Shown in pieces: positions 38,111-64,000 of a stretch of DNA of 64,000 bases. The DNA lies in the NCBI RefSeq assembly GCF_006345805.1, contig NC_043001.1, forward strand, positions 17,794,001 to 17,858,000. Reading direction: 5' to 3'. The DNA is from Octopus sinensis. Its lineage: Eukaryota. A program made the translations under genes and the position numbers. The notes beneath the pieces are model-generated. The model was given only the letters and a program-made list of their open reading frames with translations. It had not been told where the DNA came from and did no database searches. Positions within the stretch are counted from its first letter, which is position 1. Each line of letters starts with the position of its first letter.

Positions 38111-38373
38111 ATACGGTATTGTAATCGGGAAACAGCGTTTTGTGAAATTTTCGTATTCATAACAAAAGCGTTTGATCCCTAACCGGGGAATTAACTCAGG
38201 TAGACTGCTCGCTTTGCATGCAAGATGTCCTGGGATCGATTCCCAGATTCTCCAATATCGCTACTTTTGTTTTTAATATCTTGTTTGTCACTTGATTTCC
38301 TTTTCAATTACTTCTGCAATTCCGGTTCTTCTCAAATTTTCGCATACATGACAAAAGGTTGCGTCCACTGAGC

Positions 38374-38446
38374 GGGGAATTGGCTCAGATAGTAGAATGC
38401 TCTCTTTGACTGCGAGAGGTACCGGAATCGATGCCTGAATTGTCCA
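38374..38446 (+). pseudogene. tRNA-Ala pseudogene with TGA in the anticodon position (subfamily representative)
   Basis: Loop TTTGACT instead of TTTGCAT; D-stem, anticodon stem and acceptor stem mismatches. Confidence 0.8.
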
Positions 38447-38567
38447 TTGAAACTACCTTTGGTTTTGAAATCCTGTTTATTACTTGCCTCCCTTTTCATT
38501 TACATTTCAAATTCAGCGATTTTTTAAAAATTATTATATACACAACGAACACTCTAGCATATCAACT

Positions 38568-38640
38568 GGGGAATTAGCTCAGATGGTAGAGCGCTCGCTT
38601 TGCATGCGAGAGGTACCGGGATCGATACCCGGATTCTCCA
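38568..38640 (+). tRNA. tRNA-Ala-TGC: tRNA-Ala(TGC)
   Basis: Complete cloverleaf, T-loop ATCGATA, TATATA about 30 bp upstream, T-run downstream. Confidence 0.95.
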
Positions 38641-39917
38641 ATAATCTAACTTTTTGGTTTTGGTATCTCGCCTATTACTTTGCATTTGAAATTACGTGTT
38701 TTGTGAAATTTTCATATTCATAAAATCAACGTTTGACCCCTCGCCGGGAATTTACTCAGATAGAATGCTCACTTTGCATGCAAGCATTTGAAACTCCATG
38801 GTTTTTTTCAAACATTTTCATATACATAACAGAAATCTACGTTTACGCACTAAGGAATTAGATCATAATGTAGATTACTCGCTTTGCATACGGGAGGTAC
38901 CGGGATCGATGCCCGGATTCACCAAATAAGCTACTTTATTTTTAATAACTAGTCTATTATGTATTTTCATATACATAATAAAAGAAACCTATGGTGACTA
39001 ACTGGGGAATTAACTCAGGCGGGAGAGTGCCCGATTTTATTTGCAATTCCGGCTTCGTAAAATTTTCAAATACACAACAAAAAACTATTGCTCCCTCTCT
39101 CTCGGGGATGTACTCAGATGGAAGAACGCTCGCTTTGCATGCCTGAGATGCCGGATCGATACCTGGATTCACCAGATGCTGGAATCGATACCCAGATTCT
39201 CCAGTGAAGACGTTTATTTTTTGGGTTTTTTTTATAAATTGTCTAAAACTTCATTTCATTTTCATTTCCTTTTGAAATTCCAATTGTTTCAAATTTTCAA
39301 ATACATAAAAACAACAAAAAAACGCTGGTCACTCACCATGGAATTGGCTCAGAGGGTACAGGCTTCGCTTTGCATGCGAGATGTGCCAGGAATCGATACC
39401 CGAGTTCTCCAATAATGCCAATTATGTTTTTGATAGCACGTCTATTACTTGATCTCATTTGAAATTCCGAATTTTTAGAAAATTTTCAGATACAGAACAA
39501 AAACATTTGATCCCTAACTGGAATATCAACTCATATAGTAGAACGTTCGTTTTGCATTCGAGAGGTACTGGGATCGATCCTCGGATTCTCCACTAAAACT
39601 ACTTTTGTTTTTGATATCTTGTCTATCACTTGATTTCCTTTTCATTTACTTTTGCAATTCCGTTTTCTTTTTTTTTTCTTCGAATTTTCGTATACATGAC
39701 AAAAGGTTGCGTTCACTGAGCGGGGAATAGGCTCAGATGGTAGATTGCTCGCTTTCACTGTGAGAGGTACCGGAATCCATGCTTGGATTCTCCAATGAAA
39801 CTACTTTTGGTTTTGATATCTTCTTTATTACTTGACTTCATTTTTATTTAGATTTCAAATTCAGCGATTTTAAAAACAAAAATATCATATACACAACAAA
39901 CACTTTCTGAATTAACG

Positions 39918-39990
39918 GGGGAATTAGCTCAGTTGGTAGAGCGCTCGCTTTGCATGCGAGAGGTACCGGGATCGATACCCGGATTCTCCA
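39918..39990 (+). tRNA. tRNA-Ala-TGC: tRNA-Ala(TGC)
   Basis: Complete cloverleaf. Confidence 0.95.
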
Positions 39991-42310
39991 ATATCGAAAA
40001 TTTTGTTTTTGATATCTCGTCTATTCATATCATTTGCATTTGAAATTACGTGTTTTGTGAAATTTTCGTATTCATAACAAAAGCGTTTGATCCCTAACCG
40101 GGCAATTAACTCAAATAGAATGCTCGCTTTTCATGAAAGATGTCCTGCGATCGATTCCCAGATTCTCCAATAAAGCTACTTCTGTTTGTAATATCTTGTC
40201 TCTCACTTTCATTTACTTTTGCAATTCCGGTTTTATACTCTATTTTCATACACATGACAAATGGTTGCGGGCACTGGACCTAAATGACTCACATGGTAGA
40301 TGCTCGCTTTGACTGGAACAGGTACCGCAATCAATGATCGGATTCTCTAATGAAACTACTTTTCGTTTTGATATCTTGTGTATTGCGTGATTTCATTTTC
40401 ATTTATTATTGGAATTCCGATTTTTTTTTGTTTTTTTTTTTACATATACATAAGAAAAGCCATAGCTCAATTGGTAGGAGGACCCTTTTGTATTCATTTA
40501 TGTTTGAATTTTAGGGTTTTTAAATTTTCATATGCATATCAAAAGAAACATATGCTTACTCCCGGGGAATTTGCTCAGGCGGGAGAGTGTTCGATTTCAG
40601 TTTCATTTGAACCAAGGTTTGTTAAATGTTCACATGCATAACAAAAAACGTTTAATCCCTGTCCAGGCAATTAACACAGCATGCAAAGCTACTGGGATCG
40701 ATTCCCGGATTCTTCAATAAAGCTACTTTTATTTACGACATTTTACTATTGAAACTCCGGTTTTTTTTTGTTTTGTTTCTTTTTTGTTTTTTTTCAATTT
40801 ACATATGCATAAGAAAAGCCTTAGCTCAATTGGTACGAGGCACTGTTCGTATGTGAAATGTACCAGAAAGGACGTCTGGGTTTACCACTGCACCTAATTT
40901 TGTTTTTAATAACTTGTCTGTTGCTTGAATTCATTTTCATTTACTTTTGAAACTCCGCGATATTTTTAAAATGATCATATACAATAACAAACACGAATCG
41001 CCGCTGTCAGGGTAATTAACGAATAAGTTAAAGCGCTCACTTTGCATGCGAGGGGTCCCGGGCTCGATGCCCGGATTCTTTAATGAAGCTGCTTTCCTTC
41101 GAATAAGTTATGTAATACTTAATTTTATTTTCCTTTACCTCTGAAATTCAAGGATTTTTTTCTTAAATTTTTACATGAAAGTTCGCTAACTAGGGAATTA
41201 ACTCAGATGTTCGGTTCTCGCTTTGCATACGGGAGGTACCGGGATCGATGCCCGGATTCTCCAATAATGCTACTTTATTTTTAATATCTAGTATATTACT
41301 TGATTTCAAATTCATTTAAGTTTGAAATTCGAGGATTTTTAAATTTTCATATACATAATAAAAGAAACCTATGGTCACTAACTGGGGAATTAGCTCAGGT
41401 GGGAGAGTGCCCGATTTTATTTGCAATTCCTGCTTTGTAAAATTTTCAAATACACAACAAAAAACTATTGCTCCCTCTCCCGGAGAATTTACTCAGATGG
41501 TAGAACGCTCGCTTTGCATGCCTGAGATGCTGGATCAATACCCGGATTCACCAGATGCCAGAATCGATACCCAGATTCTCCAGTGAAGACGTTTTTTTTA
41601 AATTTTTTTTTTATAAATTGTCTAAAACTTCATTTCATTTTCATTTCCTTTTGAAATTCCAATTGTTTCAAATTTTCAAATACATAAAAACAACAAAAAA
41701 ACGCTGGTCACTCACCATGGAATTGGCTCAGAGGGTACAGGCCTCGCTTTGCATGCGAGATGTGCCAGGAATCGATGCCCGAATTCTCCAATAATGCTAA
41801 TTATGTTTTTGATAGATCGTCTATTACTTCATCTCATTTGAAATTCCGGATTTTTAGAAAATTTTCAGATACAGAACAAAAAGGTTTGATCCCTAACTGG
41901 AATATCAACTCATATAGTAGAACGTTCGTTTTGCATTCGAGGGATACTGGGATCGATCCCCGGATTCTCCAATAAAACTACTTTTGTTTTTGATATCTTG
42001 TCTTGATATCTTGATATCTTGATATCTTGATTTCCTTTTCATTTACTTTTGCAATTCTGTTTTTTTTTTTTTTTTCAAATTTTCGAATACATGAGAAAAG
42101 GTTGCGTCCACTGAGCAGGGAATTGGCTCAGATGATAGATTGCTCGCTTTGACTGCGTGAGGTACCGGGGTCGATGTCTGGATTTTCCAATGAAACAACT
42201 TTTGGTTTTGATATCTTTATTACTTGACTTCATTTTTATTTACATTTTAAATTCAGCAAATGTTTTAGAAAAATTATTATATACACAACGAACACTCTAG
42301 CACAGAAACT

Positions 42311-42383
42311 GGGGAATTAGCTCAGTTGGTAGAGCGCTCGCTTTGCATGCGAGAGGTATCGGGATCGATACCCGAATTCTCCA
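42311..42383 (+). tRNA. tRNA-Ala-TGC: tRNA-Ala(TGC) with compensatory T49:A65
   Basis: All stems paired; T-stem TCGGG/CCCGA. Confidence 0.9.
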
Positions 42384-43505
42384 ATAAAGTAGTTTTTTGT
42401 TTTTGATATCTCGTCTATTACTTGATATCATTTGCATTTGAAATTACGTGTTTTGTGAAATTTTCATGTTTATAACAAAACGTTTGATCCCTAACCGGGC
42501 AATTAACTCAGATAGACTACTCGCCTTGCATGCAAGATATCCTTGGATCGATTCCCAGATTCTCCAATAAAGCTACTTCTGGTTTTAATATCTTGCCTAT
42601 CACTTTCATTTCTGCAATTCGAGATTTTTTTTCTATATTTTGAATACACGACAAATGGTAGCGTGCACTGTTTTGTGAAATTTTCGTATTCATAAAAACA
42701 ACGTTTTATCCCTAACCGGGCAATTAACTCAGATAGAATGCTCGCTTTGCATGCAAGATGTCCTGGGGTCGATTCACAGATTCTCCAATAAAGCTACTTC
42801 TGTTTGTAATATCTTGTCTATCACTTTCATTTACTTTAGCAATTCCGGTTTTATTCTATATTTTCATACACATGACAAATGGTTGCGGGCTCAGATGGTA
42901 GATTGCTCGCTTTGACTGCGACAAGTACCGCAATCAATGCCCGGATTCTCTAATGAAACTACTTTTCGTTTTGATATCTTGTGTATTACGTGGTTTCATT
43001 TTTATTTACTATTGGAAATCCGGGTTTTTTTTTAATATACATATACGTAAGAAAAGCCTATCGTTACTAACCGGTGAATTAGCTCAGATGGTGGAATGCT
43101 CTTTTTATATGTGAAATGTTCCAGAAAGGACGTCTGGATTAACCAGTGAAGCTAATTTTGCTTTTAATAACTTGTCTGTTGCTTGAATTCATTTTCATTT
43201 ACTTTTGAAATTAGGCGAGTTTTTTTTTAAGTTTTCTTGTGGAGCCACTCCCTTTTTTAATATCTAGTCTATTGCTTAATTTCATTTACATTTGAAACAC
43301 CTGAGAGTTTTTTTTTTTCACATTTCATATACATAACAGAAACTTATGTTTATGCACTAGAGAATTAGGTCATAACATAGACTATTTGATTTGCATTCGA
43401 GAGGTACCGGGATCGATGCCTGGATTCTCCAATAGTGTTACTTTGTTTTTAATAACTAGTCTATTACTTGATTTCAAATTCATTTACGTTTGAAATTCAG
43501 GGATT

Positions 43506-43556
<51 letters not shown>

Positions 43557-44597
43557 GTATACACATAATAAAAGAAACCTATGGTCACTAACCGGGGAAT
43601 TTGCTCAGGTGGGAAAATGTTCGATTTCATTTTCATTTGAAAATCAGGGTTTGTAAAATGTTCACATACATAACAAAAAACGTTTAATCCCTGTCCCGGG
43701 AATTAACTCAGCATGCGAAAGGTACTGGGATCGATTCTCGGAATCTCCAATAAAGCTACTTTTGTTTTTAATATCTTGCCTATCACTTTATTTCTTTTTC
43801 ATTTACTTTGCAATTCCGATTTTTTCTTAATTTTTTAATTTTAAGCACTAGACGGAGTTTTGGCTCAGGTAGTAGAATGCTTGCTTTGACTGCGAAAGGT
43901 ACCAGAATCGGTGTCTGGATTCTCTAGTGGATCTTTTTTTTTTTTTTTTGAGTAAGTTGTCTAAAACTTCATTTCATTTTCTTTTTCTTTTGAAATTCCG
44001 GGATTTTTCAAATTTCCAAATACATAAAAACAACTAAAAAACGCTGGTCACTAACCGCGGAATTGGCTCAGAGGGTAAAGCGCTCGCTTTGCATGCGAGG
44101 TTTGACAGGAATCTATGCCTGAATTCTCCAATAATGCCAATTATGTTTTTGATAGATCGTCTATTACTTCATCTCATTTGAAATTCCGGATTTCTAGAAA
44201 ATTTTCATATACATAACAAGAATAGAACGCGCGTTTTGCATTCGAGAAGTGCTGGGATCGATCTCCGGATTCTCCAATAAAACTACTTTTGTCTTTGATA
44301 TCTTGTCTATCACTTGATTTCCTTTCCATTTACTTTCGCGATTCCGGATTTCTTTCCTTTTTGTTTTTTTCAATTTTTCGTATGAATGAAGAAAGTGTCC
44401 ACTTAATGGGGAATCAGATGGTAGATTGCTCGCTTTAACTGCGAGAAGTACCGGAATGTATGCTTGGATTCTCCAATGAAACAACTTTTGGTTTTGATAT
44501 CTTCTTTATTACTTGACTTCATTTTCATTTAGATTTCAAATTAAGCGATTTTAAAAAAAAGTATTATATACACAACAAACATTGTTGAAAGATTACT

Positions 44598-44670
44598 GGG
44601 GAATTAGCTCAGTTGGTAGAGCGCTCGCTTTGCATGCGAGAGGTACCGGGATCGATACCCGGATTCTCCA
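44598..44670 (+). tRNA. tRNA-Ala-TGC: tRNA-Ala(TGC)
   Basis: Complete cloverleaf. Confidence 0.95.
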
Positions 44671-45376
44671 ATGATGTAAATTTTTGCTTTTGATATCTCG
44701 CCTATTACGTGATATCAATTGCATTTGAAATTACGTGTTTTGTGAAATTTTCATGTTCATAACAAAAACGTTTGATCCCTAACCGTGGAATTTTCGCTTT
44801 GCATGCAAGATGTCCTTGGATCGATTCTCAGATTCTCCAATAAAACTACTTTTTTATTTACTTTTGAAATTCGAGTTTTTGCTTTTTACCATATTTTGAA
44901 TATTTTGAATACACGACAAATGCTAGACAATCGCTTTGCATGCGAAAGCTACTGGGATCGATTCCCTGATTCTCCAATAAAGCTACTTTTGTATTCGATA
45001 TCTTGCCTATTACTTGATCTCATTTACATTTCAAATTCCGCGATTGTTTTTATTATATTATTATATACACAACAAATAGACAAATATATTGTCTTTGATA
45101 TCTTGTCTATCACTTGATTTCCTTTACTTTTGCAATTCCGATTTTTTTTCATATATATGACAAAAAGTTGCGTCCACTGAACAGGGAATTGGCTCAGATG
45201 GTAGATTGCCCGCTTTGACTGCGAGAGGCACCGGAATCGATTCCTGGATTCTCCCGTGAAATTAGTTTTGGTTTTGATATCCTGTTTATTATTCGACTTC
45301 ATTTTCATTTACATTTGAAACTAAGTGATTTTTTTAAAATTATTATATACACAACAAACTCTTCTCCTACTTAATT

Positions 45377-45449
45377 GGGGAATTAGCTCAGATGGTAGAG
45401 CGCTCGCTTTGCATGCGAGAGGTACCGGGATCGATACCCGGATTCTCCA
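45377..45449 (+). tRNA. tRNA-Ala-TGC: tRNA-Ala(TGC)
   Basis: Complete cloverleaf. Confidence 0.95.
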
Positions 45450-46170
45450 ATAATCTAAATTTTGTTTTTGAGATCTCGCCTATTACTTGATATCATTTGC
45501 ATTTGAAATTACGTGTTTTGTGAAATTTTCATGTTCATAACAAAAATCTTTGATCCCTAAGCGGGGAACTGATTCAGATAGAATTTTCGCTTTGCATGCA
45601 AGATGTACTGGGATCGATTCCCAGGACAAATATAAGATATATATATATATATAAAGATATATATAAAGATTTTAATATCTTATATATTTTCGCTTTGCAT
45701 TCAAAGATATATAAGATATCAAAAAATATATAAGATATTAAAAACTTGATTTCATTTTCATTTACATTTCAAATTTCACGATTTTTAAAAAATTATTATA
45801 TATATAACAAACACTTTTCTGGACTAACCGAGGAATTAATTCAGTTGGTATCGCGCACGATTTGCATACGTGTGGTATTGTGATCAATACCGAATTCTCC
45901 AATTGATCCGCTTTTTATTTTTAATAAGTTACCTGTTACTTAATTTCCTTTACTTTTGAAATTCCGGGTTTTGTTTTAAATTTTCATATACATGACAAAT
46001 GCCGATGGAAATATCTCAGGTGGTAGAACACTCTCTTGGAAAGCGAAAGGTGCCAGAAAGGATGTCCGGATTGTCCAATGAAGCTAATTTTGATTTTAAT
46101 AAATAGTCTTGGCTTCATTTGCATTTACTTTTGAAATTCCGCATTTTTAAAAAAAAATTTTCATATACAT

Positions 46171-46380
46171 AGGCGCAGGAGTGGCTGTGTGGTAAGTAGC
46201 CTGCTTACCAAATACACATGGTTTCGGGTTCAGTCCCAATGCGTAGCACCTTGGCCAAATGTCTTTTACTATAGCTTCGGGCCGACCAAAGCCTTGTGAA
46301 TGCATTTGGTGGGCGGAAACTGAAAGAAGCCTGTCGTATATATGTATGTATGCATGTATATTTATATTTATATATAAATG

Positions 46381-46442
<62 letters not shown>

Positions 46443-46451
46443 TATATATAT

Positions 46452-46512
<61 letters not shown>

Positions 46513-46544
46513 ATATATAAATACACACACACATATATATATAT

Positions 46545-46590
<46 letters not shown>

Positions 46591-46806
46591 TGTATGTTTG
46601 TGTGTCTCTGTTTGTCCCCCCAACATTACTTGACAACCGATGCTTGTGTGTTTACGTCCCCATAACTTAGCGGTTCGGCAAAAGAGACCAATAGAATAAG
46701 TATTAGGCTTACAAAGAATAAGTCCTGAGGTCGATTTGCTCGACTAAGGGCGGTGCTCCAGCATGGCCGCAGTCAAATGACTGAAACAAGTAAAAGAGTA
46801 AAAGAG
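46171..46806 (+). mobile_element. SINE family A with expanded internal (TA)n, inserted in the array
   Basis: Full head and tail. Confidence 0.9.
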
Positions 46807-46807
46807 A

Positions 46808-47510
46808 AATACCGCATACTCAACGACGCTGACCGTCATATGGAAAAGTTCACCAATCCAAGACCGGAAACGAAAGTGCCTGTTATGATCCCTTTCACTC
46901 TCGTCTTCCACACTACCTCCTTCAGTGTAGCTATTACGCAAAGGAAACTAGCCTGCTCTTTCCTATTGAAAGAAGACGGTGAAACAATCTTAATTATAGA
47001 CTCGGTTGACAGTTGTACTCTTCTCAGATGTGACAACAGTTGTTCGACATAAGTTCCGATGTCTTCGGACATTTCACAATTGCGTGCAGGAGAGTTCCAT
47101 TGTCCTCACCGCATCTTGGATAAGTTGGCGTGGCTGAAACATTACGCCTACAGAGTTTGTCCCGAACAGGTAAGGCACCTCTGTAACATTGCCATGCCAG
47201 GGGCTTTTGGAAATTGTCCAAAGGCCCTCGCCAGAATGTTCTTCGGTACAGGCTGGCGAGTTGACTATCATCAAAGCCCAGGGTTTCTCCCAGGGCGCCG
47301 TCACATTTAAACTCTACTAACCCTCTACAAAAGGTCGAAGTGGAACCCTTGTCGCCGGCGTTGCCCGCTTCGGAGAGAAGCACGAGTGCCTGACGATACT
47401 CTGCGTGCCAAGTTCCCAACTTCTGTCTACACTTAATCTATGGGCCCAGTTCAGTAAACGAGTTGAACCGTGGAAAGAATTGTCTGAAGAACGGAGACCA
47501 CACTTGCATA
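46808..47510 (-). mobile_element. L1/Tx1-like LINE ORF2 C-terminal fragment
   Basis: LAWQCYRGALPVRDKL...PRCG...TLLHAIVKCP resembles the zf-RVT/CCHC region, followed by LCVIATLKEVVWKTR. Confidence 0.75.
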
Positions 47511-49560
47511 CCGTCTATTACATGACATGATTTTTATTTGTTTCAAATTCAACGATTTCTTTTTTTAATTTTATACACTTCAGAAACACCTATGGACACA
47601 AAACTTGGGATCATCTCAAGTGGTAGAGGGCTCGCTTTGCATTCGAGAGATACCGGGATCGTTCACGGCTTCTCCAATTCAGCTGCATTTGTTTATAATA
47701 TCTTGTCTGTTACTTCATTTCATTTTCCTTTACATTCGGAATACCAGGATTTTTTTTAAATTTTCACATATATAACAGCAACAAACAGAGCGCTCGCTTT
47801 GCATGTGAGAGGTAACGGGTTCGATACCCGGATTCTCCAAGGAGGCTACTTTTGTTTTTAATAACTTTTCTATTACTTCATTGCTTTTACTTTTGAAATA
47901 CCTGGCTTTTCTTTTTTTAATTTTCATATACAGAGTAAAAAACCATGGTCACTAACTGGGAATTAGCTCAGGTGGTAGAACGCTCGTCTTATATTCAGGA
48001 GGTACCGGGTTCGAAACACTGAATCTCCAGTGAGGATACTTTATTTTTAATAACATGCCCATTGCTTCATTCCATTTTCATTTACTTTTGAAACTTTGGA
48101 GTTTTTTTTTAAAATTTTCATGTACATATCAAAAACCTATGACCGCTAACCAGCAATTATCCCAGGTAGTAGGGTGCTAGGATTCTGTAATGAATATACT
48201 TTTCCTTTTTAATAACTTGCTAATTAGTTCATTTCACTTACATTTACATTTGAAAACACCGGGATTTTTTAAAATTTTCAAGTACACAACAAAATCCTCA
48301 CTTTGCTCAGCTTAGAATTAGCTCAAAATATAGGGCGCTCGCTTTGCATGTGATACGTACCGGGATCAGTCAACGGATTCTCCAGACATCTTATCTCTTG
48401 TTTCATTTTATTTTTATTTACTTTTGAAATTCCCGGAATTTTATTTTCATTTTCATATACATAACAATAAGCTGGGGGCGCCAAGCGAGGAATTAGTTCA
48501 GATGGTAAAGCGAACGCTTTGCATGTGAGAGGTGTCGGTATCAATGCCATGATTTTCCAATTGAGATGCTTTGCTTTTAATAACTTGTCTATTACTTGAT
48601 ATCTTTCTCAATTTCTTTTGAATTTCCGGTTTTTTTATAAAATATTCATATATATAGTAAAACCTTTGCCTACTCATAGAATTAGCTCAGAATATAAGGC
48701 GCTCGCTTTGTTTGCCTATGAAAAGATGAAAACAAACCCAGAATATCAAAAGTAAATGAAATCAAGCAATAGGAAAGCCATTAAAAACAAAAGAAACTTC
48801 ACTGGAGAATCTGGGAATCGATCTCTACACCTCTCGCGTGCAAAGTGAGCGCTCTACAATCTGAGCTAAATACCCGGCTGCAGACCAAAAACTTTTGTTT
48901 TGTGTATATACATTTAAAAAAAAACAACCTTGAAAAGAAATGTAAATGAAATGAATGGACAAGGATATTAAAAGTAGATTTAATTGAATAAGCTAGGTAT
49001 CGATCTAGCTATCTTTCACAAGCAAAGCGAGCGATCTACCGTCTGAACTAATTCTCTGATTAGTGTCTGAATGCCTATCATCTGCTTTTGTTCTGTATAT
49101 GAAAATTCAAAATAATCCCGGCATTTTGAATCTAAATGAAAATGACATCAAGTAATAGAGAAATTATAAAAAACGAAAGAAGCTTCTTTGGTGGATCCGG
49201 GTATCGATCCCGGTACCTCGCACACGCAAAGCAAGTGCTCTGCAATCGGAGATAATTTCCCAGTCCGCGCCTACAAATGTTTTTTGTGCATATGAAAAGT
49301 TGAAAACACCCGGAATATGAAAACTAAATGAAACAAATAGACAAGTTATCAAAAACGAAAGAAAATTCGTTTGAGAGTCTGAGCATCCAGGTACCCCTCA
49401 CACTCAAGACAAGATCTCTGCCATTTTGGACAATTCCCCAGTTAGCAACCATAGGTTTTTGTTATATATATATGAAAATTTAATAAACTTCCAGGAATTT
49501 CAGAACTAAGTGTAAATGTGTGTAATAGACAAATTATTAAAAGGTAAAAAGTAGATTTAT

Positions 49561-49633
49561 TGGAGAATCCGGGTATCGATCCCGGTACCTCTCGCATGCT
49601 AAGCGAGCGCTCTACCATCTGAGCTAATTCCCC
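49561..49633 (-). tRNA. tRNA-Ala-AGC: tRNA-Ala(AGC), T-loop ATCGATA
   Basis: Complete cloverleaf. Confidence 0.93.
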
Positions 49634-50875
49634 GCACTCCTGCTGTCGGCGTTTGTTGTGCATATGAAATATTGAAAACAAAGTCAGGACGTCAAAACTA
49701 AATGAAATCAAGTGATAGATAAGTTATTAAAAGCAAATGTAGTATTACTGGAGAATACGGACATCGATCCCGGTAGCTCCCGCATGCAAAACGAGCGCAC
49801 CACCTCTTGAGCTAAAATCTTTGTTAGCGACCATGGATGTTTGTTATGCATATGAAAACAAAAAAAAATCGCAGAATTTAAAACGCATATGAAAAGGAAC
49901 TCAAGAGACAACGAAATTAAAGAACGAAATTAGTTTTACTGGAGAATCTGGATATCGATCCTGGTATCTCTCGCATGTAAAGCGAGCGCTCTACCAACAG
50001 AGAACATTTGGCGGTTAGTAAATACAGCTTTTGTTTGTTTTGTTTTTGTTTTTGTTTTTCCAGTTTCAGCTCTTGAGCTGTGGCCATGCTGGGGCACCGC
50101 CATTGTGGTGAAAGAGTACAGCAGGGATCACCACCCCCTGCCGGAGCCTCGTAGAGCTTTTAGGTGTTTTCGCTCAATAAACACACACAACGCCCGGTCT
50201 GAGAATCGAAACCGCGATCCTGCGACCGCGAGTCCGCTGCCCTAACCAGTAGGCCATTGCGCCTCTACAATGTTTTTTTTAAAAACTCGGAATTTCAAAA
50301 GTAAATGAAATCAAATAAAAGTAATGTTATGAAAATGAAACGCAGCTTTCCTGAAGAATCCGTAAATTGATACCGGTTCCTCTCGCATGGAAAGCGAACG
50401 CTCTACGTCTTCAAGTATTTCCTCGCTTAACGGACGTAGGTTTTTTTTTATGTATATGAAATTTTTTATTAAAAAATCAGGGCATTTCAAAAGAAAATGA
50501 AATGAAACGAGACAAGATATCAAAACAAAAGTAGTATTACTGAAGAATCAGTGAACTGATCCGGGTACATATTGCATGCAGAGTGAGCGCCCTATATTCT
50601 GAGCTAATTCTACGCTTAGTAAACACAGATTTTGCTACGTACATGAATATTCTTTAAAAGCCCCGGAAATTCAAAAGAAATTGAAAAGGATATCAAGTAA
50701 TAGACAAGTTTTAAAAAGAAAGTGGCTCGTTGCATTGATACCATTACGTCTCGCGTTGTAAGGTGAGCCTTTACTGGCTTTGGTCATGCATGTGAAATGT
50801 TTTTTAAATTCCTGAATTTCGAAATTCAATGAAAAATATCAATTGATAAATTATTAAAAATGAAAGAAGTCTCCT

Positions 50876-50948
50876 TGGAGAATCCGGGTATCGATCCCGG
50901 TACCTCTCGCATGCAAAGCGAGCGCTCTACCATCTGAGCTAATTCCCC
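50876..50948 (-). tRNA. tRNA-Ala-TGC: tRNA-Ala(TGC)
   Basis: Complete cloverleaf. Confidence 0.95.
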
Positions 50949-52263: not shown

Positions 52264-52320
52264 ACAAAGTTTCTTATCGTTTTAATAATTTATCCGTTAC
52301 ATGATATCATTTGCACTTGG

Positions 52321-53718: not shown

Positions 53719-54025
53719 AGCGAGCGCCCTATATTCTGAGCTAATTCTACGCTGAGTAAACAGGTTTTGCTATGTATATGATTATTCTTTAAAAGCCCCG
53801 GAAATTCAAAAGAAATTGACAAAAATAACAAGTAATGGACAAGTATTAAATAGAAGGTGGCTCATTGCATTTATACCATTACGTCTCACATTGTAAAGTG
53901 AGCACTCGTCTGGTGACCGTTCACTGGTTTTTGTTATGCATATGAAAATTTTTTTAAATTTCCGAATTTCGAAATTCAATGAAAGATAGCAATTGACAAA
54001 TTATTAAAAACGAAAGCAGTTTCCT

Positions 54026-54098
54026 TGGAGAATCCGGGTATCGATCCCAGTACCTCTCGCATGCAAAGCGAGCGTTCTACCATCTGAGCTAATTCCTC
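54026..54098 (-). pseudogene. tRNA-Ala(TGC) probable pseudogene
   Basis: A2:C71 mismatch and broken D-stem (GAAC); paralog of intact 50876. Confidence 0.75.
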
Positions 54099-54531
54099 AG
54101 CTTGCTTCTGTAGACGTTTGTTATGCATATGAAAAGTTTAAAGCAAACCCAGAATATCGAAACTAAATCAAACAAAAGAATCTTCAGTGGAGAATCCAGG
54201 TATCGATCTCGCTACCATCTCGCATGCAAAGCGAGCGCTCTACCATCTGAGCTAACTCACCGGGGACACAGCTGAGATTTTTGTTATGTATATAATTTTT
54301 ATTTTTTAAATCTTACAATTTCAAATGTAAATGAAAATATAATGAATAGACAAGTTATGGGTCTTTTCCTGTGTACTACTAGCGAAGAGTGATCCCGATG
54401 CGCGCAAGCGCGTACTCGCGCAACCGTGCTAGCAAGTCATGACTAGTTTGTTTTTAATAACTCGTCTATTACTTCATTTCATTTAGTTTTCAACATTACA
54501 TATACAAAACAAACATCCAAACCAGTTGTCC

Positions 54532-56093: not shown

Positions 56094-56517
56094 GGATCTT
56101 TTCGGTTTGCACGGCAGTTTTTTCTAGCAGTGTCATATGAAATTGTCACCCATAATTATAACCCTAGTATCCATCTATTGCATTTCAATCTGTTTTAGGG
56201 TTAGGGTTAGGGTTAGGGGTGTCGGAAGGGTATCTTTTTTACTTCACAAATGTAAATAAACACAATCTGTTTCTTAAACGAGGGACATATTCATACGGCA
56301 CAGAATGTTGTTTACCTGAATAGACGTCAGTGATTGGTCGAAATTGCAGAAATTGAAGAAAAAAAAACAACAAATATCTTACAAACCACAGAATTTTCTC
56401 AATAAAGTCAAGAGAAAAAGATGTTTTATAAACACATTCTACCAGTATACGAAGTTTTAAAGTGTTTAGTTACGTGGAAATTATTTCAAAAAACTGCCGT
56501 TCAAACCGAAAAGATCC
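56094..56517. mobile_element. MITE with 8-bp target-site duplication AAAACCTG
   Basis: TSD at 56086-56093 and 56518-56525; empty-site paralog near 57700. Confidence 0.92.
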
Positions 56518-56931
56518 AAAACCTGTGTGAGAAATAGTTGAGAGGGTAGAGCGCTCATTTTGCGTGCGAGAGGTACCGGGATCGATTCCCGGATTTTTCT
56601 GGAAAGCTATTTTAATAACCTTTGTTTTATTTCATTTCATTTACTTTTGAAACTTCTGGGGTTTTTTTCATTTTCATATACATAACAAAAGCTGTGGTTA
56701 CTAACCTGGGAACTGGCTCTGTTGGTAGATCGCAAGTTTTCTTATCGTTTTATTTATTTGTCTCTTACATGATATCATTTGCAATTTAATAAAATTCCGG
56801 GAATTTTATTAAATTTTCGTAAATATATAAAAAAAACCGATGGTTACGTAATGGGGAATTAGCCCAGATGGCAGAGGGCATGCTCGGTTCCAACTTCTCA
56901 TATGTATAACAAATGCCTGTAATCGTCGACC

Positions 56932-58291: not shown

Positions 58292-58340
58292 CAACTTTTC
58301 TTATCGTTTTAATAATTTATCCGTTATCATTTGCACTTGG

Positions 58341-58947: not shown

Positions 58948-59020
58948 GGGGAATTAGCTCAGGTGGTAGAGCGCTCGCTTTGCATGCGAGAGGTACCGGG
59001 ATCGATACCCGGATTCTCCA
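58948..59020 (+). tRNA. tRNA-Ala-TGC: tRNA-Ala(TGC)
   Basis: Complete cloverleaf. Confidence 0.95.
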
Positions 59021-59860
59021 ACAAATCTTATAGTTTTGATAATTTGTCTGTTAACGATATCATTTGCACTTAGTTTTGAAATTCTGGGATTTTTTGTTTA
59101 ATTGTCATATACATAACAATAACCGGGGTCGCCAACCGAGGAATTAGCTCAGATGATAGATCGCACGTTTTGCATGTGAGAGGTGTCGATATCAATTCCA
59201 TGATTCTCCAATGGAACTGCTTCGCTTTTAATACTTGTCTGTTACCTGGTATCCTTTTCAATTTCTTTCGAACTTCCAGGGCATTTAAAAAAATATTCAT
59301 ATACATAGCAAAACCTATGTTTATTCAGCATGGAATTAGCTCAGGATATAGTGCACTCGCTTTACATGCGATATGTACTGGGATCAATCCACAGATTCTC
59401 CAGTAATACTACTTTTGTTTCCATATCTTGTCTCTTGTTTCATTTCATTTTCATTTACTTTCGAAATTCCCGAATTTAAAAAAAAATTTCGTATACATAA
59501 AACACACCAATGTTTGTTAACCGGGGAAATAGCGGAAAGGGTAGAATGCTCGCTTTACATATGGGAGGTAGCCGTAGCGATTCCTGGATTCTTCACGCGG
59601 TGTTTCATTTTAATAACCTGTCTTTTATTTCATCGCATTTAATTTTGAAATTCCGGTTGTTTGTTTCTTTTCTAAATTTTCATTTACATAACAAAAATGC
59701 GGTCACTAACTGTGTAGTTGGCTCTGGTACACCAAAAGTATTTGCATGTGAGACGCACCGAGAACGGTGTCCGGATTCTCCCGTGAAACTAATTTCGTTT
59801 TCAATAAATTGTCTATTATGTGAGTTCATTTTCATTTGCTTTTAAATACCACGATTTTTC

Positions 59861-60290
59861 GGGAGGGGCGGTGGACCGGAGCGTAGGGAGGACCTCACGG
59901 ACTTCCACGTCGGTTCTCCGCGACTCTCGGGGCGGAAGCGGAATGCTGTGAAGGGCCGATCACAGCCATTGACGTGGAGGAGGCATTGTCGGACAACGGC
60001 GAGGACAAGTCGCCGGGACAAGATGGTCTTCCATACAAACTGTATTATAGCATGCTAGACTTGTTTGGACACCTACTTGCATGCGTCTATAACAACTGGC
60101 AGTAGAAGTGGGGTATTCCCAAGTCTGTGAGCCGGTGACGCTGCTACGAAAGGCCCCAAACAAGGGGGACGTAATTGATAATTTTAGGCCCATCACTCTG
60201 CGTAACACAGAAGATTTTGGCCAAGGTATTAACAAAAAGGTTGGCGCAGGTCATGGATAGTCTTGTTGGGGAGGCCCAAACATACATCAT
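59861..60290 (+). mobile_element. L1/Tx1-like LINE internal fragment (RT N-terminal region)
   Basis: GPITAIDVEEAL...DKSPGQDGLPY...NFRPITLRNT...ILAKVLTKRLAQVMDSLVGEAQT with a stop and frameshifts. Confidence 0.85.
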
Positions 60291-60924
60291 GATTCTATTT
60301 TCCACGATTTTCTAAAAAATTATTATATATATATAACAAATATTTCTGGGGTCTTACCGTGGAATTAGCGTAGTGGGTAGAGCGCTCGCCTGACATGCTA
60401 AAAGTATCGGGAATCGATGTCTTTATTCTCCAACACGCTAATTTTGTTTTCGATATCTCGTCAGTTTTTTTTTTTTATTTTGGCTTTTAAAATTCTGGGT
60501 TTTGTAAAATTTTCGTACGCAAAATAAAAACTATGATCCATAATCGGGGAATTAACTCAGATAGTAGAACGCTCGCTTTGCATATGAGAGGTACTAGGAT
60601 CAATTCCCAGAATCTCCAATAAAACTACTTTCGTATTTGATATCTTGTCTATCACTTGATTTCCTTTTCATTTAATTTTGCAATTTTTTTTTTTTAATTT
60701 CCATATACATGACAAAAGGTTGCGTCCACTGAACGAGGAATAGGCTCAGATGGTTGACTGCTCACTTTGACTGCGAGAGGTACCGGAATCGATACCTGGA
60801 TTCTCCATTGAAACTACTTTTAGTTTTGATATCTTCTTTATTACTTCATTTCATTTACATTTCAAATTCAGCGAATTTTTTAAAAAATTATTATATACCC
60901 AACAAACATGATTCCTAGTTAACG

Positions 60925-60997
60925 GGGGAATTAGCTCAGTCGGTAGAGTGCTCGCTTTGCATGCGAGAGGTACCGGGATCGATACCCGGATTCTCCA
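60925..60997 (+). tRNA. tRNA-Ala-TGC: tRNA-Ala(TGC), G10:U25 wobble
   Basis: Complete cloverleaf with C25T. Confidence 0.85.
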
Positions 60998-62322
60998 ATA
61001 ATGTAAACTCTTGTTTTTGATATCCCGCCTATTACTTGATATCATTTGCATTTGAAATTACGTGTTTTGTGAAATTTTCATATTCATAACAAAAACGTTT
61101 GATCCATAACCTGGAAATTAACACGCTTTGCATGCAAGATGTCCTGGGATCGATTCCCAGATTCCCAAATAAAGCTACTTCTGTTTTTAATATCATGCCT
61201 ATCACTTTCATTTACTTTCGCAATTCCGGTTTTCTTTTTCTATATCTTGATATACATGACAAATAGTTGCGTGCACTAGACCTAGATGACTCATATGGTA
61301 GATTGCTCGCTCTGACTGCGACAGGTACTGGAAATAATGCCCGGATTCTCTAATGAAACTACTTTTCGTTTTGATATTTTGTGTATTACGTGATTTCATT
61401 TTCATTTACTATTGGAATTCCGGGGTTTTTTAAAATTTACATATACGTAAGAAAAAACCAATCATCTCTAACCGGGGAATTATCTCAGCTGGTAGAGCGC
61501 TCTCTTTGTATGTGAAAGATACCAGAAAGGACCTATGGATTCACCAGTGATACTAATTTTACTTTTAATAATTTGTCTATTGCTTGAATTCATTTTCATT
61601 TACTTTTGAAATTCCGCCATTTTTTAAATATATAATGACAAACACGCATCGATGCTGACCAGGTAATTAGCGCATAGGGTAAAGCACTCACTTTGCATGC
61701 GAGTGGCCCGGGAATCGATATCCGGATTTTCCAATGAAGCTGCCTTTATTTCGAATAAGTTATGTAATACTTAATTTTATTTTTCTTTACTTCTGAAATT
61801 CCAGGATTTTTTCTTAATTTTTTTTCCTAAATGTTCGCTTTTTTTTTCTAATAAGTTGTCTAAAACTTTTTTACATTTTTCTTTTCTTTTGAAATTCTGG
61901 GTCTTTTCAAATTTTCAAATACATAAAAACAACAACACAACGCTAGTCCCTCACCGCGGAATTGGATCAGAGCGTAGAGCATTCGCTTTGCGTGCAAGAT
62001 GTGCCAGGAATCGATACCAGAATTCTCCAAAACTACTAATTATGTTTTTGATAGATCGTCTATTGCTTAATCTCATTTGAAATTCCGGGCTTTGGAAAAT
62101 TTTCATATACATAACAGAAACGCTTGATCTCTAACTGGGAAATTAACTCAAATAGTAGAACGCTCGCTTTGCATGCGAGAGCTACTGGGATCGATTCCCG
62201 GGTTCTCCAATAAAGCTATTTTCGTTTTTGATATCTTGTCTATTACTTGATTTCATCTTCATTTACATTTCAAATTCCGCAATTTTTTATAAATTATCAT
62301 ATACACAACAAACATGTTAAGT

Positions 62323-62395
62323 GGGGAATTAGCTCAGATGGTAGAGCGCTCGCTTTGCATGCGAGAGGTACCGGGATCGATACCCGGATTCTCCA
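62323..62395 (+). tRNA. tRNA-Ala-TGC: tRNA-Ala(TGC)
   Basis: Complete cloverleaf. Confidence 0.95.
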
Positions 62396-63299
62396 TTGAA
62401 GAGATTTTTGCTTTTATAAGTTGTCTATTACATTTTCCTTTACTTTTGAAATTCCGGGTTTTTGTTGTTTTTTTTCATTTTCATATACATAAAAAAATGC
62501 TGCAGTCTCTTACCGCGGAATTAGGTCAGAGAGTAGAGCGCTCGCTTTGCATGTGTGGAGTCCTACCAATCGATTCCAGGATTCTCTAATAATGTCAATT
62601 TTGTTTTTGATAACTCGTCTATTACTTGATATCATTTGCATTTGAAATTTCTGATTTCGTAAAATTTTCAAATACTTAACAAAAAACGGGGAATTAAATC
62701 AGATAGTAGAACGCTCGCTTTGCATGCGAGAGATACTGTGATCGATTCCCGGAATCTCCAATAAAGCTACTTTTGTTTTTAATATCTTGTCTATCACTTG
62801 ATTTCATTTTCATTTACTTTTCAAATTCAGATTTTTTTAATTTAATTTTCATATACATGACTAAATTTTGTGTGCACCAAAAGGGGTAGATCGATCGCTT
62901 TGATATCAACAGGTACCAGGATTGATGCCCCGTTTCTTCAATACAGCTAATTTTCATTTTAATATCTTGTCTATTAATAAGATTTCATTTTCATTTACAG
63001 TTGAAATTCCGAGGTTTTTTTTTTAAATTTCTACATACATAACAAAAACAAATATTCACTCACAGGGGAATTACATCAGAGGGTAGAGCGATCGATGCAT
63101 GGATTCTGGGATCGATGCATGGTCCTGGGATCGATGCATGGATTCTCCGATGAAGCTAATTTTTTTTCTGATCTCATTTATTACTTAATTTCATTTTCAT
63201 TTACTTTTGAAATTCCGCGTTGTCTGAAATTTTTCATATACATAACGAAAACTTATGGTCATTAACCGGGGAATTAGCCCAGGTGATAGAACGCTCGCC

Positions 63300-64000
63300 T
63301 TAACTTAAAATCAGAATTTTAGGCTAAATATCAGTAGAAAAAATACCCAAAAAGGCTAAAAAATTCTAAACATGACAAAAAAATGCTGAAGACTAATTAT
63401 ATCAAAATGCCTAATTTTTATTTACATTTTTATTTACTTTTTTTAATTGTATTCAGCATTGAGAAATACCTTCTTGAATTTCACTGATTTGATCACTTTC
63501 AGCTGCAGGTCTTGACTTCTGTATACATTCAAGGTCCCAATCTTGTTAGTTATGTGTTTTGGAATATCGAAGATTTTGCAACATTTGCCATATCTTTACA
63601 GGCCATATTTTATTGACAGTATTGATCTAAGCATAGGAAAATGCATTTTGTTTTTCAATTTTGATTTGACTACACCCATACTACTGAACAACCGTTCAAC
63701 TTCTGCATTTGCGTTTGGCAATGTCAATAGATTAATGGTAAAATTTGCAACATCTCTAAAAGGATTTCCCCCAGTAGCATCTTTATATCTTTATATTCCA
63801 AGACTTCCAGTCAGAATGCCTCAGTATTAGACGTATTTGTCCATTTAACTAAATGAATGCTATTAAACTGAATTTCAGTTGAAGCATTTTGTTCTTCATT
63901 TAAATGCATTGCTTCTAAGACAGGTAAAATTGGTTCTTTGAAATGCTGCAAAATATTCTTTACTGAAAAACATTTGATATTCTTCAGTATATTAATATTT
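63300..64000 (-). mobile_element. hAT transposon fragment (transposase C-terminal dimerisation region), continues beyond the window
   Basis: Minus-strand NPFRDVANFTINLLTLPNANAEVERLFSSMGVVKSKLKNKMHFPMLRSILSIKYGL; stops and a frameshift. Confidence 0.8.

What the first reader, a model, noticed from the sequence alone, without database searches (positions are those of the whole stretch)
38185..63300. A 25-kb satellite whose monomer is a tRNA-Ala gene plus spacer
The whole ~180-bp unit (tRNA and a conserved AT-rich spacer) is tandemly amplified roughly 100 or more times (estimated). Sixteen copies look intact and the rest are decayed. This is gene duplication rather than SINE retroposition: flanks are co-duplicated and there are no tails or TSDs. 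It captures birth-and-death evolution of a single isotype at unusual density. Whether this is described for the species I cannot determine.
Basis: partly seen in the sequence, partly recalled or inferred. Interest (0 to 1): 0.8.

Follow-up and report, generated by a model that had tools for sequence, protein, structure and literature searches.

The report
Decaying tandem array of tRNA-Ala genes
A 25-kb stretch of an animal genome is built from about 120 head-to-tail copies of a 187-bp tRNA-alanine gene unit, of which 16 are still kept intact by selection and the rest are dead; it is a clean example of a known kind of tRNA gene cluster, not a new kind of element.

Summary
Window 38134-63301 contains 124 matches to a ~187-bp unit made of a 73-nt tRNA-Ala and a 114-nt AT-rich spacer. 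Of these, 78 are near full length, 108 lie on the + strand and 16 on the - strand. Exactly 16 copies are intact (Rfam 54-64 bits; the next best scores 43.6).

The units abut directly, with no tails or target-site duplications, so this is DNA-level tandem duplication and not retroposition.

It is not a homogenised satellite:
- Neighbouring units are only ~67% identical.
- Later growth came from multi-unit block duplications (offsets of 1.7, 2.4, 3.2, 6.0 and 18-21 kb; 86-96% identity) and inversions.
- About 28% of the span is not matched by the unit; most of that is transposon insertions.

In the intact copies, all 336 stem pairs are canonical. Between closest paralogues the bodies differ by 2.0% and the flanks by 17.8% (p=9e-31). 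Dead copies diverge equally in body and flank. This is birth-and-death evolution under purifying selection.

Flanks of intact copies diverge faster than flanks of dead neighbours in the same duplicated block (19% against 13%). That matches the known signature of transcription-associated mutagenesis and suggests the intact copies are transcribed.

The founder carried anticodon TGC. The AGC (3) and CGC (2) genes arose inside the array by wobble-base changes.

Verdict: new member of a known kind, of moderate interest.

The parts
38134..63301 (.). Whole tRNA-Ala tandem array: 124 matches to the 187-bp unit (73-nt tRNA body plus ~114-nt AT-rich spacer), covering 72% of the span
   Evidence: nhmmer profile search; period statistics
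38134..46170 (+). Sub-array A. All units are on +. It has a higher-order repeat of ~2.3-2.4 kb (13-15 units) with one intact TGC gene per repeat, plus two extra intact genes
   Evidence: Each unit's best match lies 15, 13 or 28 units away at 88-96% identity; BLAST 38849-40276 against 41189-42670 gives 86%
46171..47545 (.). Transposon insertion that splits the array. It consists of a SINE-like element with an internal TA/TATG microsatellite (about 46171-46810), followed by a LINE fragment with a zf-RVT domain (47024-47419, - strand)
   Evidence: Sequence; Pfam PF13966 E=4e-6; gap in unit coverage
47546..59837 (.). Sub-array B. It has a different spacer subtype, contains block duplications, two inverted blocks and MITE insertions, and holds all the AGC and CGC genes
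48746..51134 (-). Inverted block of 12 units, including intact genes 49561 (AGC) and 50876 (TGC)
   Evidence: nhmmer strand
53719..54309 (-). Inverted block of 4 units, a paralogue of 50489-51134 (offset ~3150 bp, 82-92% identity). It holds two lightly damaged tRNA copies
59838..60308 (+). GC-rich insert. It looks like a frameshifted LINE reverse-transcriptase fragment
   Evidence: Translations show RT-like stretches in two frames; the assignment rests on my inference from known LINE RT motifs
60309..63301 (+). Sub-array A', a paralogue of sub-array A (81-91% identity at offsets of 18-21 kb). The last unit is cut off at 63301
38568..38640 (+). Intact tRNA-Ala(TGC)
   Evidence: Rfam 62.2 bits; sequence
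39918..39990 (+). Intact tRNA-Ala(TGC)
   Evidence: Rfam 64 bits
42311..42383 (+). Intact tRNA-Ala(TGC) with a compensatory T-stem change (49:65, C-G to U-A)
   Evidence: Rfam 63.2 bits
44598..44670 (+). Intact tRNA-Ala(TGC)
   Evidence: Rfam 64 bits
45377..45449 (+). Intact tRNA-Ala(TGC)
   Evidence: Rfam 62.2 bits
49561..49633 (-). Intact tRNA-Ala(AGC)
   Evidence: Rfam 59.4 bits
50876..50948 (-). Intact tRNA-Ala(TGC)
   Evidence: Rfam 62.2 bits
52191..52263 (+). Intact tRNA-Ala(AGC). Its block paralogue 58219 carries TGC
   Evidence: Rfam 59.4 bits
54532..54604 (+). Intact tRNA-Ala(TGC), variant with T26 and C44
   Evidence: Rfam 58.2 bits
55199..55271 (+). Intact tRNA-Ala(CGC)
   Evidence: Rfam 60.6 bits
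55551..55623 (+). Intact tRNA-Ala(AGC), variant with G16, T45 and G60
   Evidence: Rfam 54.3 bits
56932..57004 (+). Intact tRNA-Ala(CGC)
   Evidence: Rfam 58.9 bits
58219..58291 (+). Intact tRNA-Ala(TGC)
   Evidence: Rfam 62.2 bits
58948..59020 (+). Intact tRNA-Ala(TGC). Its closest paralogue 56932 carries CGC
   Evidence: Rfam 60.4 bits
60925..60997 (+). Intact tRNA-Ala(TGC), with a G:U pair in the D stem
   Evidence: Rfam 61.6 bits
62323..62395 (+). Intact tRNA-Ala(TGC)
   Evidence: Rfam 62.2 bits
38185..38254 (+). Lightly damaged copy (3-nt D-arm deletion plus substitutions), probably a pseudogene
   Evidence: Rfam 43.6 bits; sequence
54026..54098 (-). Recently damaged copy (G2A breaks the acceptor stem). 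It is the paralogue of intact gene 50876
   Evidence: Rfam 43.2 bits
52319..52741 (+). MITE-like insert with ~30-bp terminal inverted repeats and internal (CCCTAA)n. Co-duplicated copies lie at 58339-58760 and 54660-55009 (5' truncated)
   Evidence: Alignment A1; block BLAST
56096..56521 (-). The same MITE in the opposite orientation, flanked by an 8-bp direct repeat AAAACCTG. It is inserted 11 nt upstream of a tRNA body. A co-duplicated copy lies at 53248-53718
50043..50296 (-). Genuine tRNA-derived SINE inserted in the array, with a B-box-like head and an (AAAAC)n tail
   Evidence: Sequence; gap in unit coverage
29265..36544 (.). Five dispersed intact tRNA-Ala(AGC) genes next to the array: 29265-29337 +, 31058-31130 +, 31675-31747 -, 34370-34442 -, 36472-36544 -. 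They share only the TATA-like box and T-run with the array unit

Best explanation
This is a cluster of RNA polymerase III tRNA-Ala genes that arose by tandem DNA duplication, through unequal crossing-over or replication slippage. The duplicated unit is 187 bp and self-contained: an upstream TATA-like box, a 73-nt tRNA-Ala(UGC) gene with internal A and B boxes, and a T-run terminator.

The first amplification is old. Neighbouring units are now only ~67% identical. After it, most copies lost function and have drifted neutrally.

Later, multi-unit blocks were duplicated and in two places inverted. Transposons (a MITE, two SINEs and LINE fragments) inserted into the array.

Sixteen copies have been kept as working genes by purifying selection on the tRNA body. 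They are probably transcribed. Single wobble-base (position 34) changes in some of them produced AGC and CGC isoacceptor genes from the TGC founder.

Shown by the tests: the array structure, the constraint on the 16 bodies, neutral decay of the rest, the block duplications, and the different anticodons in close paralogues.

Inferred, not shown: transcription of the intact copies, and unequal crossing-over as the mechanism.
For: Structure:
- 124 unit matches with a median period of 187 bp.
- The flanks are co-conserved.

Two classes of copy:
- Rfam scores are bimodal: 16 copies at 54-64 bits, then 43.6 and below.

Constraint on intact copies:
- All 336 stem pairs are canonical. Variation is confined to loop positions, wobble base 34, one G:U pair and one compensatory double change.
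- Pairwise identity among intact copies is 97% in the body and 65% in the flanks.
- Closest-paralogue pairs of intact copies differ by 2.0% in the body and 17.8% in the flanks (odds ratio 0.09, p=9e-31). Pairs of decayed copies differ by 13.9% and 12.3%.

Decayed copies:
- 75.6% of stem pairs are canonical, with a median of 5 broken pairs per copy.
- 41 of 124 units lack much of the tRNA body.
- Both A and B boxes are intact in 4 of 108 decayed copies, against 16 of 16 intact copies.

Gene signals:
- Every intact copy has a run of at least 4 T within ~25 nt downstream, and most have a TATA-like box about 20-35 nt upstream (13 of 16 by a strict pattern).

Block duplications:
- A unit's best match is not its neighbour but a unit at a constant offset of 15, 13, 29, 10 or ~85-100 units.

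Sign of transcription:
- Within the same duplicated blocks, flanks of intact copies diverged 19.2% against 12.7% for flanks of decayed neighbours (Fisher p=1e-11; paired Wilcoxon p=7e-5).
- The excess is strongest at -17 to -1.
- This is the pattern described for transcription-associated mutagenesis at active tRNA genes (PMC6130373, PMC6961574).

Anticodon changes:
- Every decayed copy has T at position 34 except two (one C, one G); the commonest anticodon is TGC (42 copies), and none is AGC or CGC.
- Close paralogues differ only at position 34: 52191 AGC against 58219 TGC, and 56932 CGC against 58948 TGC.
Against: - No expression data exist, so transcription is inferred from flank divergence alone. 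The pairs pooled are not independent of one another.
- 'Intact' was defined by similarity to a tRNA model, so high body identity among intact copies is partly built in. The bimodal score distribution and the flank comparison are what carry the argument.
- Gene conversion from tRNA-Ala genes elsewhere could help keep the bodies alike and could also explain the AGC copies.
- Copy 55551 shares G16 and G60 with the dispersed AGC gene at 29265.
- The organism and the rest of its tRNA-Ala gene set are unknown, so I cannot say how much this array contributes to the tRNA pool.
- Two near-perfect palindromes lie just upstream. They show that this region of the assembly may contain artefacts.
Confidence: 0.8

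Rival explanations
1. The intact bodies stay alike through gene conversion from tRNA-Ala genes elsewhere in the genome, not through selection on each array copy. On this view the array copies need not be functional.
For: tRNA families are known to evolve partly in concert. Copy 55551 (AGC) shares G16 and G60 with the dispersed AGC gene at 29265. AGC appears in three separate places on the flank-only tree.
Against: Body variants track the flank phylogeny. U16 is shared by the syntenic higher-order-repeat copies 39918, 42311 and 44598, and A16 by 38568 and 45377. Conversion would have to hit 16 units and miss about 108 interleaved ones that are equally similar. A compensatory stem change (42311) and zero broken pairs out of 336 point to selection on the fold. 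The faster divergence of their flanks suggests these copies are active.
Confidence: 0.1
2. It is a structural satellite, for example pericentromeric, that happens to derive from a tRNA gene. The tRNA-like parts have no translational role.
For: Head-to-tail units of 187 bp, a common satellite unit size. Most units are dead. The array's extent beyond the window is unknown.
Against: There is no homogenisation: neighbouring units are ~67% identical. Sixteen bodies are under strong constraint. The region holds five further intact tRNA-Ala genes with unrelated spacers, as expected of a gene cluster.
Confidence: 0.06
3. The units are tandem arrays of a small LTR retrotransposon that carries a tRNA-like sequence in its LTR (Helenus-type TRIM), as reported to inflate tRNA gene counts in rust fungi and to occur in some animals, including oyster and zebrafish.
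For: Helenus elements carry tRNA-like (including tRNA-Ala-like) sequences and can form tandem arrays (PMC10886601).
Against: The unit is only 187 bp, with one tRNA per unit and no separate internal region. The only candidate primer-binding stretch (consensus columns 36-52) is the least conserved part of the unit, at 0.29-0.80. The only matches to the unit elsewhere in the window are the five AGC genes, which share just the promoter box and T-run.
Confidence: 0.02
4. The copies are SINEs or retroposed tRNA pseudogenes that accumulated at one locus.
For: Cephalopod and other large invertebrate genome papers attribute very high tRNA counts to SINEs (PMC6962438).
Against: The period is regular and both flanks are co-duplicated. 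There are no tails and no target-site duplications. Real SINEs inside the array look quite different.
Confidence: 0.01
5. The array, or its copy number, is an assembly artefact.
For: Two near-perfect palindromes at 30969-31836 and 32410-32859 look like foldback artefacts. Tandem repeats are prone to misassembly.
Against: Units are so diverged (neighbours ~67%, the most similar blocks 86-96% over 1-1.8 kb) that collapse or false expansion is unlikely. Unique transposon insertions anchor the order.
Confidence: 0.03

Closest known systems
Silk-gland-specific tRNA-Ala gene cluster of Bombyx mori (Underwood et al. 1988, as cited in PMC12308677)
   Same: Both are tandem clusters of genes for one isotype, alanine, in an invertebrate. 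The genes are Pol III genes. From my own knowledge (not checked here), silkworm tRNA-Ala genes depend on AT-rich or TATA-like upstream elements, as the conserved box here suggests for this array.
   Different: The original paper could not be read, so unit size and pseudogene content cannot be compared. Tissue-specific use is shown there and is unknown here. Here about 87% of units are dead and three anticodons occur.
Arabidopsis thaliana tandem tRNA clusters (Ser-Tyr-Tyr 'SYY' cluster on chromosome 1; tRNA-Cys and tRNA-Pro clusters) (PMC12308677, PMC10701932)
   Same: Both are tandemly repeated tRNA gene units that arose by local duplication, contain some tRNA-like pseudogenes, and have TATA-like and poly-T signals.
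   Different: The plant units are larger (about 0.4 kb for the tRNA-Cys repeats) or hold three genes each. Most plant copies are intact. The plant clusters are known to be silenced by methylation and reactivated in root tips.
Entamoeba tRNA gene arrays (PMC2652664)
   Same: tRNA genes are organised as long head-to-tail arrays.
   Different: The Entamoeba units hold up to five different tRNAs plus short tandem repeats, make up more than 10% of the genome, and account for almost all its tRNA genes. They are not one isotype with mostly dead copies.
Homogeneous tDNA clusters surveyed across eukaryotes (Bermudez-Santana et al. 2010, PMC2888827)
   Same: The array meets that survey's definition: adjacent tDNAs of the same amino acid less than 1 kb apart, mostly in parallel orientation. 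The survey concludes that such clusters arise independently many times.
   Different: The unit here is unusually short (one gene per 187 bp) and the run unusually long (~120 units).
5S rDNA tandem arrays (from my own knowledge)
   Same: The architecture is the same: a short Pol III gene plus a non-transcribed spacer repeated head to tail, with pseudogene units and mixed birth-and-death and concerted evolution.
   Different: The gene is different. 5S arrays are usually far more homogeneous and much larger.
tRNA-derived SINEs
   Same: Both carry a tRNA-like Pol III promoter and reach high copy number.
   Different: SINEs spread through RNA, are dispersed, and have tails and target-site duplications. 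None of this holds for the array units.

Membership tests
Homogeneous tandem tRNA gene cluster | Adjacent tRNA genes or pseudogenes of the same amino acid less than 1 kb apart (definition in PMC2888827) | tested here: met
   124 tRNA-Ala-derived units at a median spacing of 187 bp. Every tRNA called in the window is Ala.
Homogeneous tandem tRNA gene cluster | At least some members are bona fide tRNA genes: cloverleaf, identity element, internal promoter, terminator | tested here: met
   16 copies score 54-64 bits. All 336 stem pairs are canonical, including G3:U70. A and B boxes are intact in 16 of 16. All have downstream T-runs.
Homogeneous tandem tRNA gene cluster | Origin by local DNA duplication, so flanks are shared between units | tested here: met
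   The spacer is co-conserved. Block paralogy occurs at constant offsets.
Homogeneous tandem tRNA gene cluster | Members are transcribed by Pol III | not testable with these tools
   The only evidence is indirect: faster flank divergence at intact copies.
Satellite DNA | Long head-to-tail array of a short unit | tested here: met
   25 kb with a 187-bp period, though 13% of units are inverted and 28% of the span is not matched by the unit, mostly transposon inserts.
Satellite DNA | Units homogenised by concerted evolution (high identity between units) | tested here: not met
   Mean pairwise identity is ~67%. Tandem Repeats Finder detects only 5 copies, at 68% matches.
Satellite DNA | High genomic abundance, typically in heterochromatin or at centromeres | not testable with these tools
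   Only one window is available. A protein-level search for spurious ORFs from homologous arrays found nothing.
tRNA-derived SINE | A-rich or simple-repeat 3' tail and target-site duplications around each copy; dispersed insertion | tested here: not met
   Units abut with a conserved spacer and have no tails. Compare the true SINE at 50043-50296.
Helenus-type TRIM (LTR retrotransposon with a tRNA-like LTR) | Paired LTRs flanking an internal region with a primer-binding site and polypurine tract | tested here: not met
   There is one tRNA per 187-bp unit and no distinct internal region. The candidate primer-binding columns are the least conserved.

The most novel reading that the evidence does not exclude
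The array acts as a nursery and main source of tRNA-Ala isoacceptors. A single UGC founder has repeatedly produced working AGC and CGC genes by wobble-base mutation. The 16 surviving genes are regulated together as a block, for example switched on in a tissue or stage with high alanine demand, as described for the silkworm and Arabidopsis clusters.
Probability: 0.15. Interest if true: 0.55.

Novelty: new member of a known kind. Interest (0 to 1): 0.35.

Why it matters
The array is a compact natural experiment. More than 100 paralogues of one tRNA gene sit side by side with the same starting sequence and the same chromosomal setting, so live and dead copies can be compared directly.

It shows four things in one locus:
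- how strongly the tRNA body is constrained (2% against 18% divergence);
- that flanks of live genes mutate faster than flanks of dead ones;
- that isoacceptor genes can be re-derived by a single wobble-base change;
- that such arrays grow by block duplication after the first amplification.

It also carries a practical warning for genome annotation. tRNA counts in large invertebrate genomes are inflated by tandem pseudogene arrays as well as by SINEs.

It does not reveal a new mechanism.

Tried and rejected
- **Tandem Repeats Finder** on the window found the unit only at 62132-63047 (5 copies, 68% matches), so I used a profile search instead.
- **Organism identification failed.**
  - Exact look-ups of two transposon ORFs found nothing.
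  - A reverse-transcriptase fragment search gave its best hits (72-79% identity) in short contigs of assembly GCA_024449705.1, whose species I could not establish.
  - From memory, the SINE starting GGCGCAGGAGTGGCTGTGTGG and the very dense microsatellites recall octopus genomes. This is unverified.
- **Protein-level search for homologous arrays** used a spurious 124-aa ORF that runs through three units; nothing was found.
- **Metagenome scan** with the 39-nt 3' half of the tRNA returned 20 contigs that appear to be eukaryotic. They carry single tRNA-Ala(AGC) genes or Ala-His repeats, and none has the 187-bp array. The tRNA body is therefore widespread, but the array was not seen there.
- **CpG decay as a sign of methylation silencing.** The excess of transitions at CpG is only mild (21% against 14% at other C/G sites), and CpG observed/expected in the array is about 1.1, so this is not informative.
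- **Even spacing of intact genes.** No two intact genes are adjacent, but this is expected by chance with p=0.11.
- **Promoter box conservation.** The upstream TATA-like box is not better conserved in intact copies than in dead ones (0.80 against 0.87).
- **Underwood et al. 1988** is not held in the library.

Full report
**What is there**

The window is eukaryotic: it has very dense microsatellites, 33-43% G+C, and mariner, LINE, SINE and MITE fragments. ARAGORN tRNA genes, all tRNA-Ala, 19 of them between 38185 and 62396. Rfam gives 26 tRNA matches at or above the gathering score.

Reading 38000-42000 shows a tRNA-like segment every ~185 bp, with a recurring spacer. I built a profile from nine intact copies with their flanks, refined it once, and searched with nhmmer. 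It finds 124 matches in 38134-63301. Outside that span it matches only five dispersed tRNA-Ala(AGC) genes at 29-36.5 kb.

The median distance between adjacent units on the same strand is 187 bp. There are 78 near-full-length and 46 partial units, 108 on + and 16 on -. The consensus unit reads: spacer ...AAAATTTTCATATACATAACAAAA..., then about 17 variable bases, then the 73-nt tRNA, then a trailer with a TTTTGTTTTT run, then an AT-rich distal spacer.

**Two classes of copy**

With a permissive threshold, the Rfam scores are bimodal. Sixteen copies score 54-64 bits. The next best score 43.6, 43.2, 35.8, 30.1 and 29.0, and the rest score lower or are not detected.

The 16 intact copies comprise 11 with anticodon TGC, 3 with AGC (49561, 52191, 55551) and 2 with CGC (55199, 56932). 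In these copies:
- All 336 stem pairs are canonical, including G3:U70. G3:U70 is the alanine identity element (established knowledge).
- Variation is confined to loop positions 16, 17, 26, 44, 45 and 60, wobble base 34, one G:U pair in the D stem, and one compensatory double change in the T stem of 42311 (49:65, C-G to U-A).
- All have intact A and B boxes.
- All have a run of at least four T within ~25 nt downstream, and most have a TATA-like box about 20-35 nt upstream (13 of 16 by a strict pattern).

The other ~108 units are dead:
- 41 of the 124 units lack much of the tRNA body.
- Those that retain it have 75.6% canonical pairs and a median of five broken pairs.
- Only 4 of 108 keep both promoter boxes.

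**Selection**

Among intact copies, pairwise identity is 97% in the body but only 65% in the flanks. That is no higher than among the flanks of dead copies, at 67%. The intact copies are therefore not young duplicates.

Taking each unit with its closest paralogue:
- Dead-dead pairs differ by 13.9% in the body and 12.3% in the flanks, which is neutral.
- Intact-intact pairs differ by 2.0% in the body and 17.8% in the flanks (odds ratio 0.09, p=9e-31).

Body variants follow the flank phylogeny. For example, U16 is shared by the syntenic copies 39918, 42311 and 44598. This argues for purifying selection on separate lineages and against array-wide conversion. 'Intact' was defined by model score, so part of the body identity is built in. 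The bimodality and the flank comparison carry the argument.

**How the array grew**

A unit's best match is almost never its neighbour. It is a unit at a constant offset:
- 15 units (2377 bp);
- 13 units (~2290-2340 bp within sub-array A, and ~3150 bp between the two inverted blocks);
- 29 units (6018 bp);
- 10 units (1733 bp);
- 84-100 units (18-21 kb).

These matches are 86-96% identical. BLAST of the region against itself shows the same blocks, for example 51314-53026 against 57302-59021 at 85.7%, and 38849-40276 against 41189-42670 at 86%.

So an old amplification of the 187-bp unit was followed by duplication of multi-unit blocks and by two inversions (48746-51134 and 53719-54309).

Most of the 28% of the span not matched by the unit consists of insertions:
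- A ~420-bp MITE with ~30-bp terminal inverted repeats, present five times in two orientations. The copies were co-duplicated with their blocks, so the MITE inserted after the first amplification and before the block duplications.
- A SINE plus a LINE fragment at 46171-47545.
- A tRNA-derived SINE with an (AAAAC)n tail at 50043-50296.
- A LINE-like fragment at 59838-60308.

The real SINEs have tails and the array units do not. This settles the question of duplication against retroposition.

A rough dating depends on the organism being an octopus, which is unverified, and on the rates quoted in PMC13282606 (Jukes-Cantor 0.09 is about 25 My and 0.2 about 56 My). On that basis the first amplification would be some tens of millions of years old, and the block duplications roughly 10-20 My old.

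**Sign of transcription**

Within the same duplicated blocks, and therefore at the same age, flanks of intact pairs have diverged 19.2% and flanks of neighbouring dead pairs 12.7% (Fisher p=1e-11; paired Wilcoxon p=7e-5). In the clearest case, 39918 against 42311, the figures are 19.3% and 5.5%.

The excess is strongest in the 17 bases just upstream of the gene, where identity to the consensus is 0.43 for intact copies and 0.64 for dead ones. This matches the published finding that active tRNA genes mutate fast in and next to the gene through transcription-associated mutagenesis, and that flank divergence predicts activity (PMC6130373, PMC6961574). I take this as indirect evidence that the intact copies are transcribed. 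The pooled pairs overlap, so the p-values are optimistic.

**Anticodon changes**

Every dead copy has T at position 34 except two (one C, one G). The commonest anticodon among them is TGC (42 copies), the rest mostly differ from TGC by one base, and none is AGC or CGC. The founder was therefore tRNA-Ala(UGC).

Close paralogues differ only at position 34: 52191 (AGC) against 58219 (TGC), and 56932 (CGC) against 58948 (TGC). On a tree built from flanks only, AGC appears at three places and CGC at one, all in sub-array B.

Shifts between isoacceptors by first-anticodon-base substitution are known. They made up 39 of 44 isoacceptor shifts in PMC3923123. Conversion from the nearby dispersed AGC genes remains possible for copy 55551.

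**Comparison with what is known**

Tandem and homogeneous tRNA gene clusters have arisen many times in eukaryotes (PMC2888827). Examples include the Entamoeba arrays (PMC2652664), the Arabidopsis SYY cluster, and the silkworm silk-gland tRNA-Ala cluster (PMC12308677).

Cephalopod genome papers report very high tRNA counts but attribute them to SINEs (PMC6962438). I found no description of this array. I could not identify the species.

A scan of metagenome contigs found the same tRNA body only as single genes or Ala-His repeats. A protein-level search for homologous arrays found nothing.

**Verdict**

The array is a new member of a known kind. Its noteworthy features are the short unit, the high fraction of dead copies, the clear selection and mutagenesis signatures, and the isoacceptor switching within the array. 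Interest is moderate.

Noticed in passing
window 30969-31836 and 32410-32859: Two near-perfect palindromes: arms of 427 nt at 99% with a 14-nt spacer, and arms of 223 nt at 100% with a 4-nt spacer. The first holds two identical tRNA-Ala(AGC) genes (31058 + and 31675 -). Such foldbacks may be long-read assembly artefacts, in which case one of the two genes is not real.
   Followed up: partly
window 52319-52741, 58339-58760, 54660-55009 (one orientation); 53248-53718, 56096-56521 (the other): A ~420-bp MITE-like element with terminal inverted repeats GGATCTTTTCGGTTTGAACGGCAGTTTTT and an internal telomere-like (CCCTAA)n stretch. The copy at 56096-56521 is flanked by an 8-bp direct repeat AAAACCTG, which is typical of hAT elements, and sits 11 nt upstream of a tRNA body.
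   Followed up: partly
window 46171 to about 46810: A SINE-like element starting GGCGCAGGAGTGGCTGTGTGGTAAG, with a long TA/TATG microsatellite inside it. A related 21-bp motif is repeated at 15561-15615. From memory it resembles an abundant octopus repeat; this is not verified.
   Followed up: no
window 50043-50296 (-): A tRNA-derived SINE with a B-box-like head and an (AAAAC)n tail, inserted between array units.
   Followed up: partly
window 39146-39204 and 63090-63146: Small internal tandem duplications of the T-arm segment (29-nt and 19-nt units, 2-3 copies) inside dead units. This looks like replication slippage within the tRNA body.
   Followed up: no
window 315-889 and 22451-23292: Very long trinucleotide microsatellites: (TCT) about 194 copies and (TTA) about 282 copies.
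   Followed up: no
window 1986-2352 (+) and 21438-22055 (-): The same ~184-217-bp SINE-like sequence is locally duplicated in tandem at two sites 19 kb apart, in opposite orientations.
   Followed up: no
window 19918-20409 (-): A mariner/Mos1-type transposase N-terminal fragment (Pfam HTH_48, E=3e-22).
   Followed up: partly
window 28614-28816: A 16-bp minisatellite (GTTACGACTGAGTTCC), about 12.7 copies at 95% matches, just upstream of the first dispersed tRNA-Ala gene.
   Followed up: no
L010 (contig JAAUYG010131676.1) 405-2417: A contig from a metagenome collection, apparently eukaryotic, with alternating tRNA-Ala(AGC) and tRNA-His(GTG) genes at a period of ~900-1050 bp. This is a different, heterogeneous kind of tRNA tandem repeat that uses the same Ala body.
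   Followed up: no
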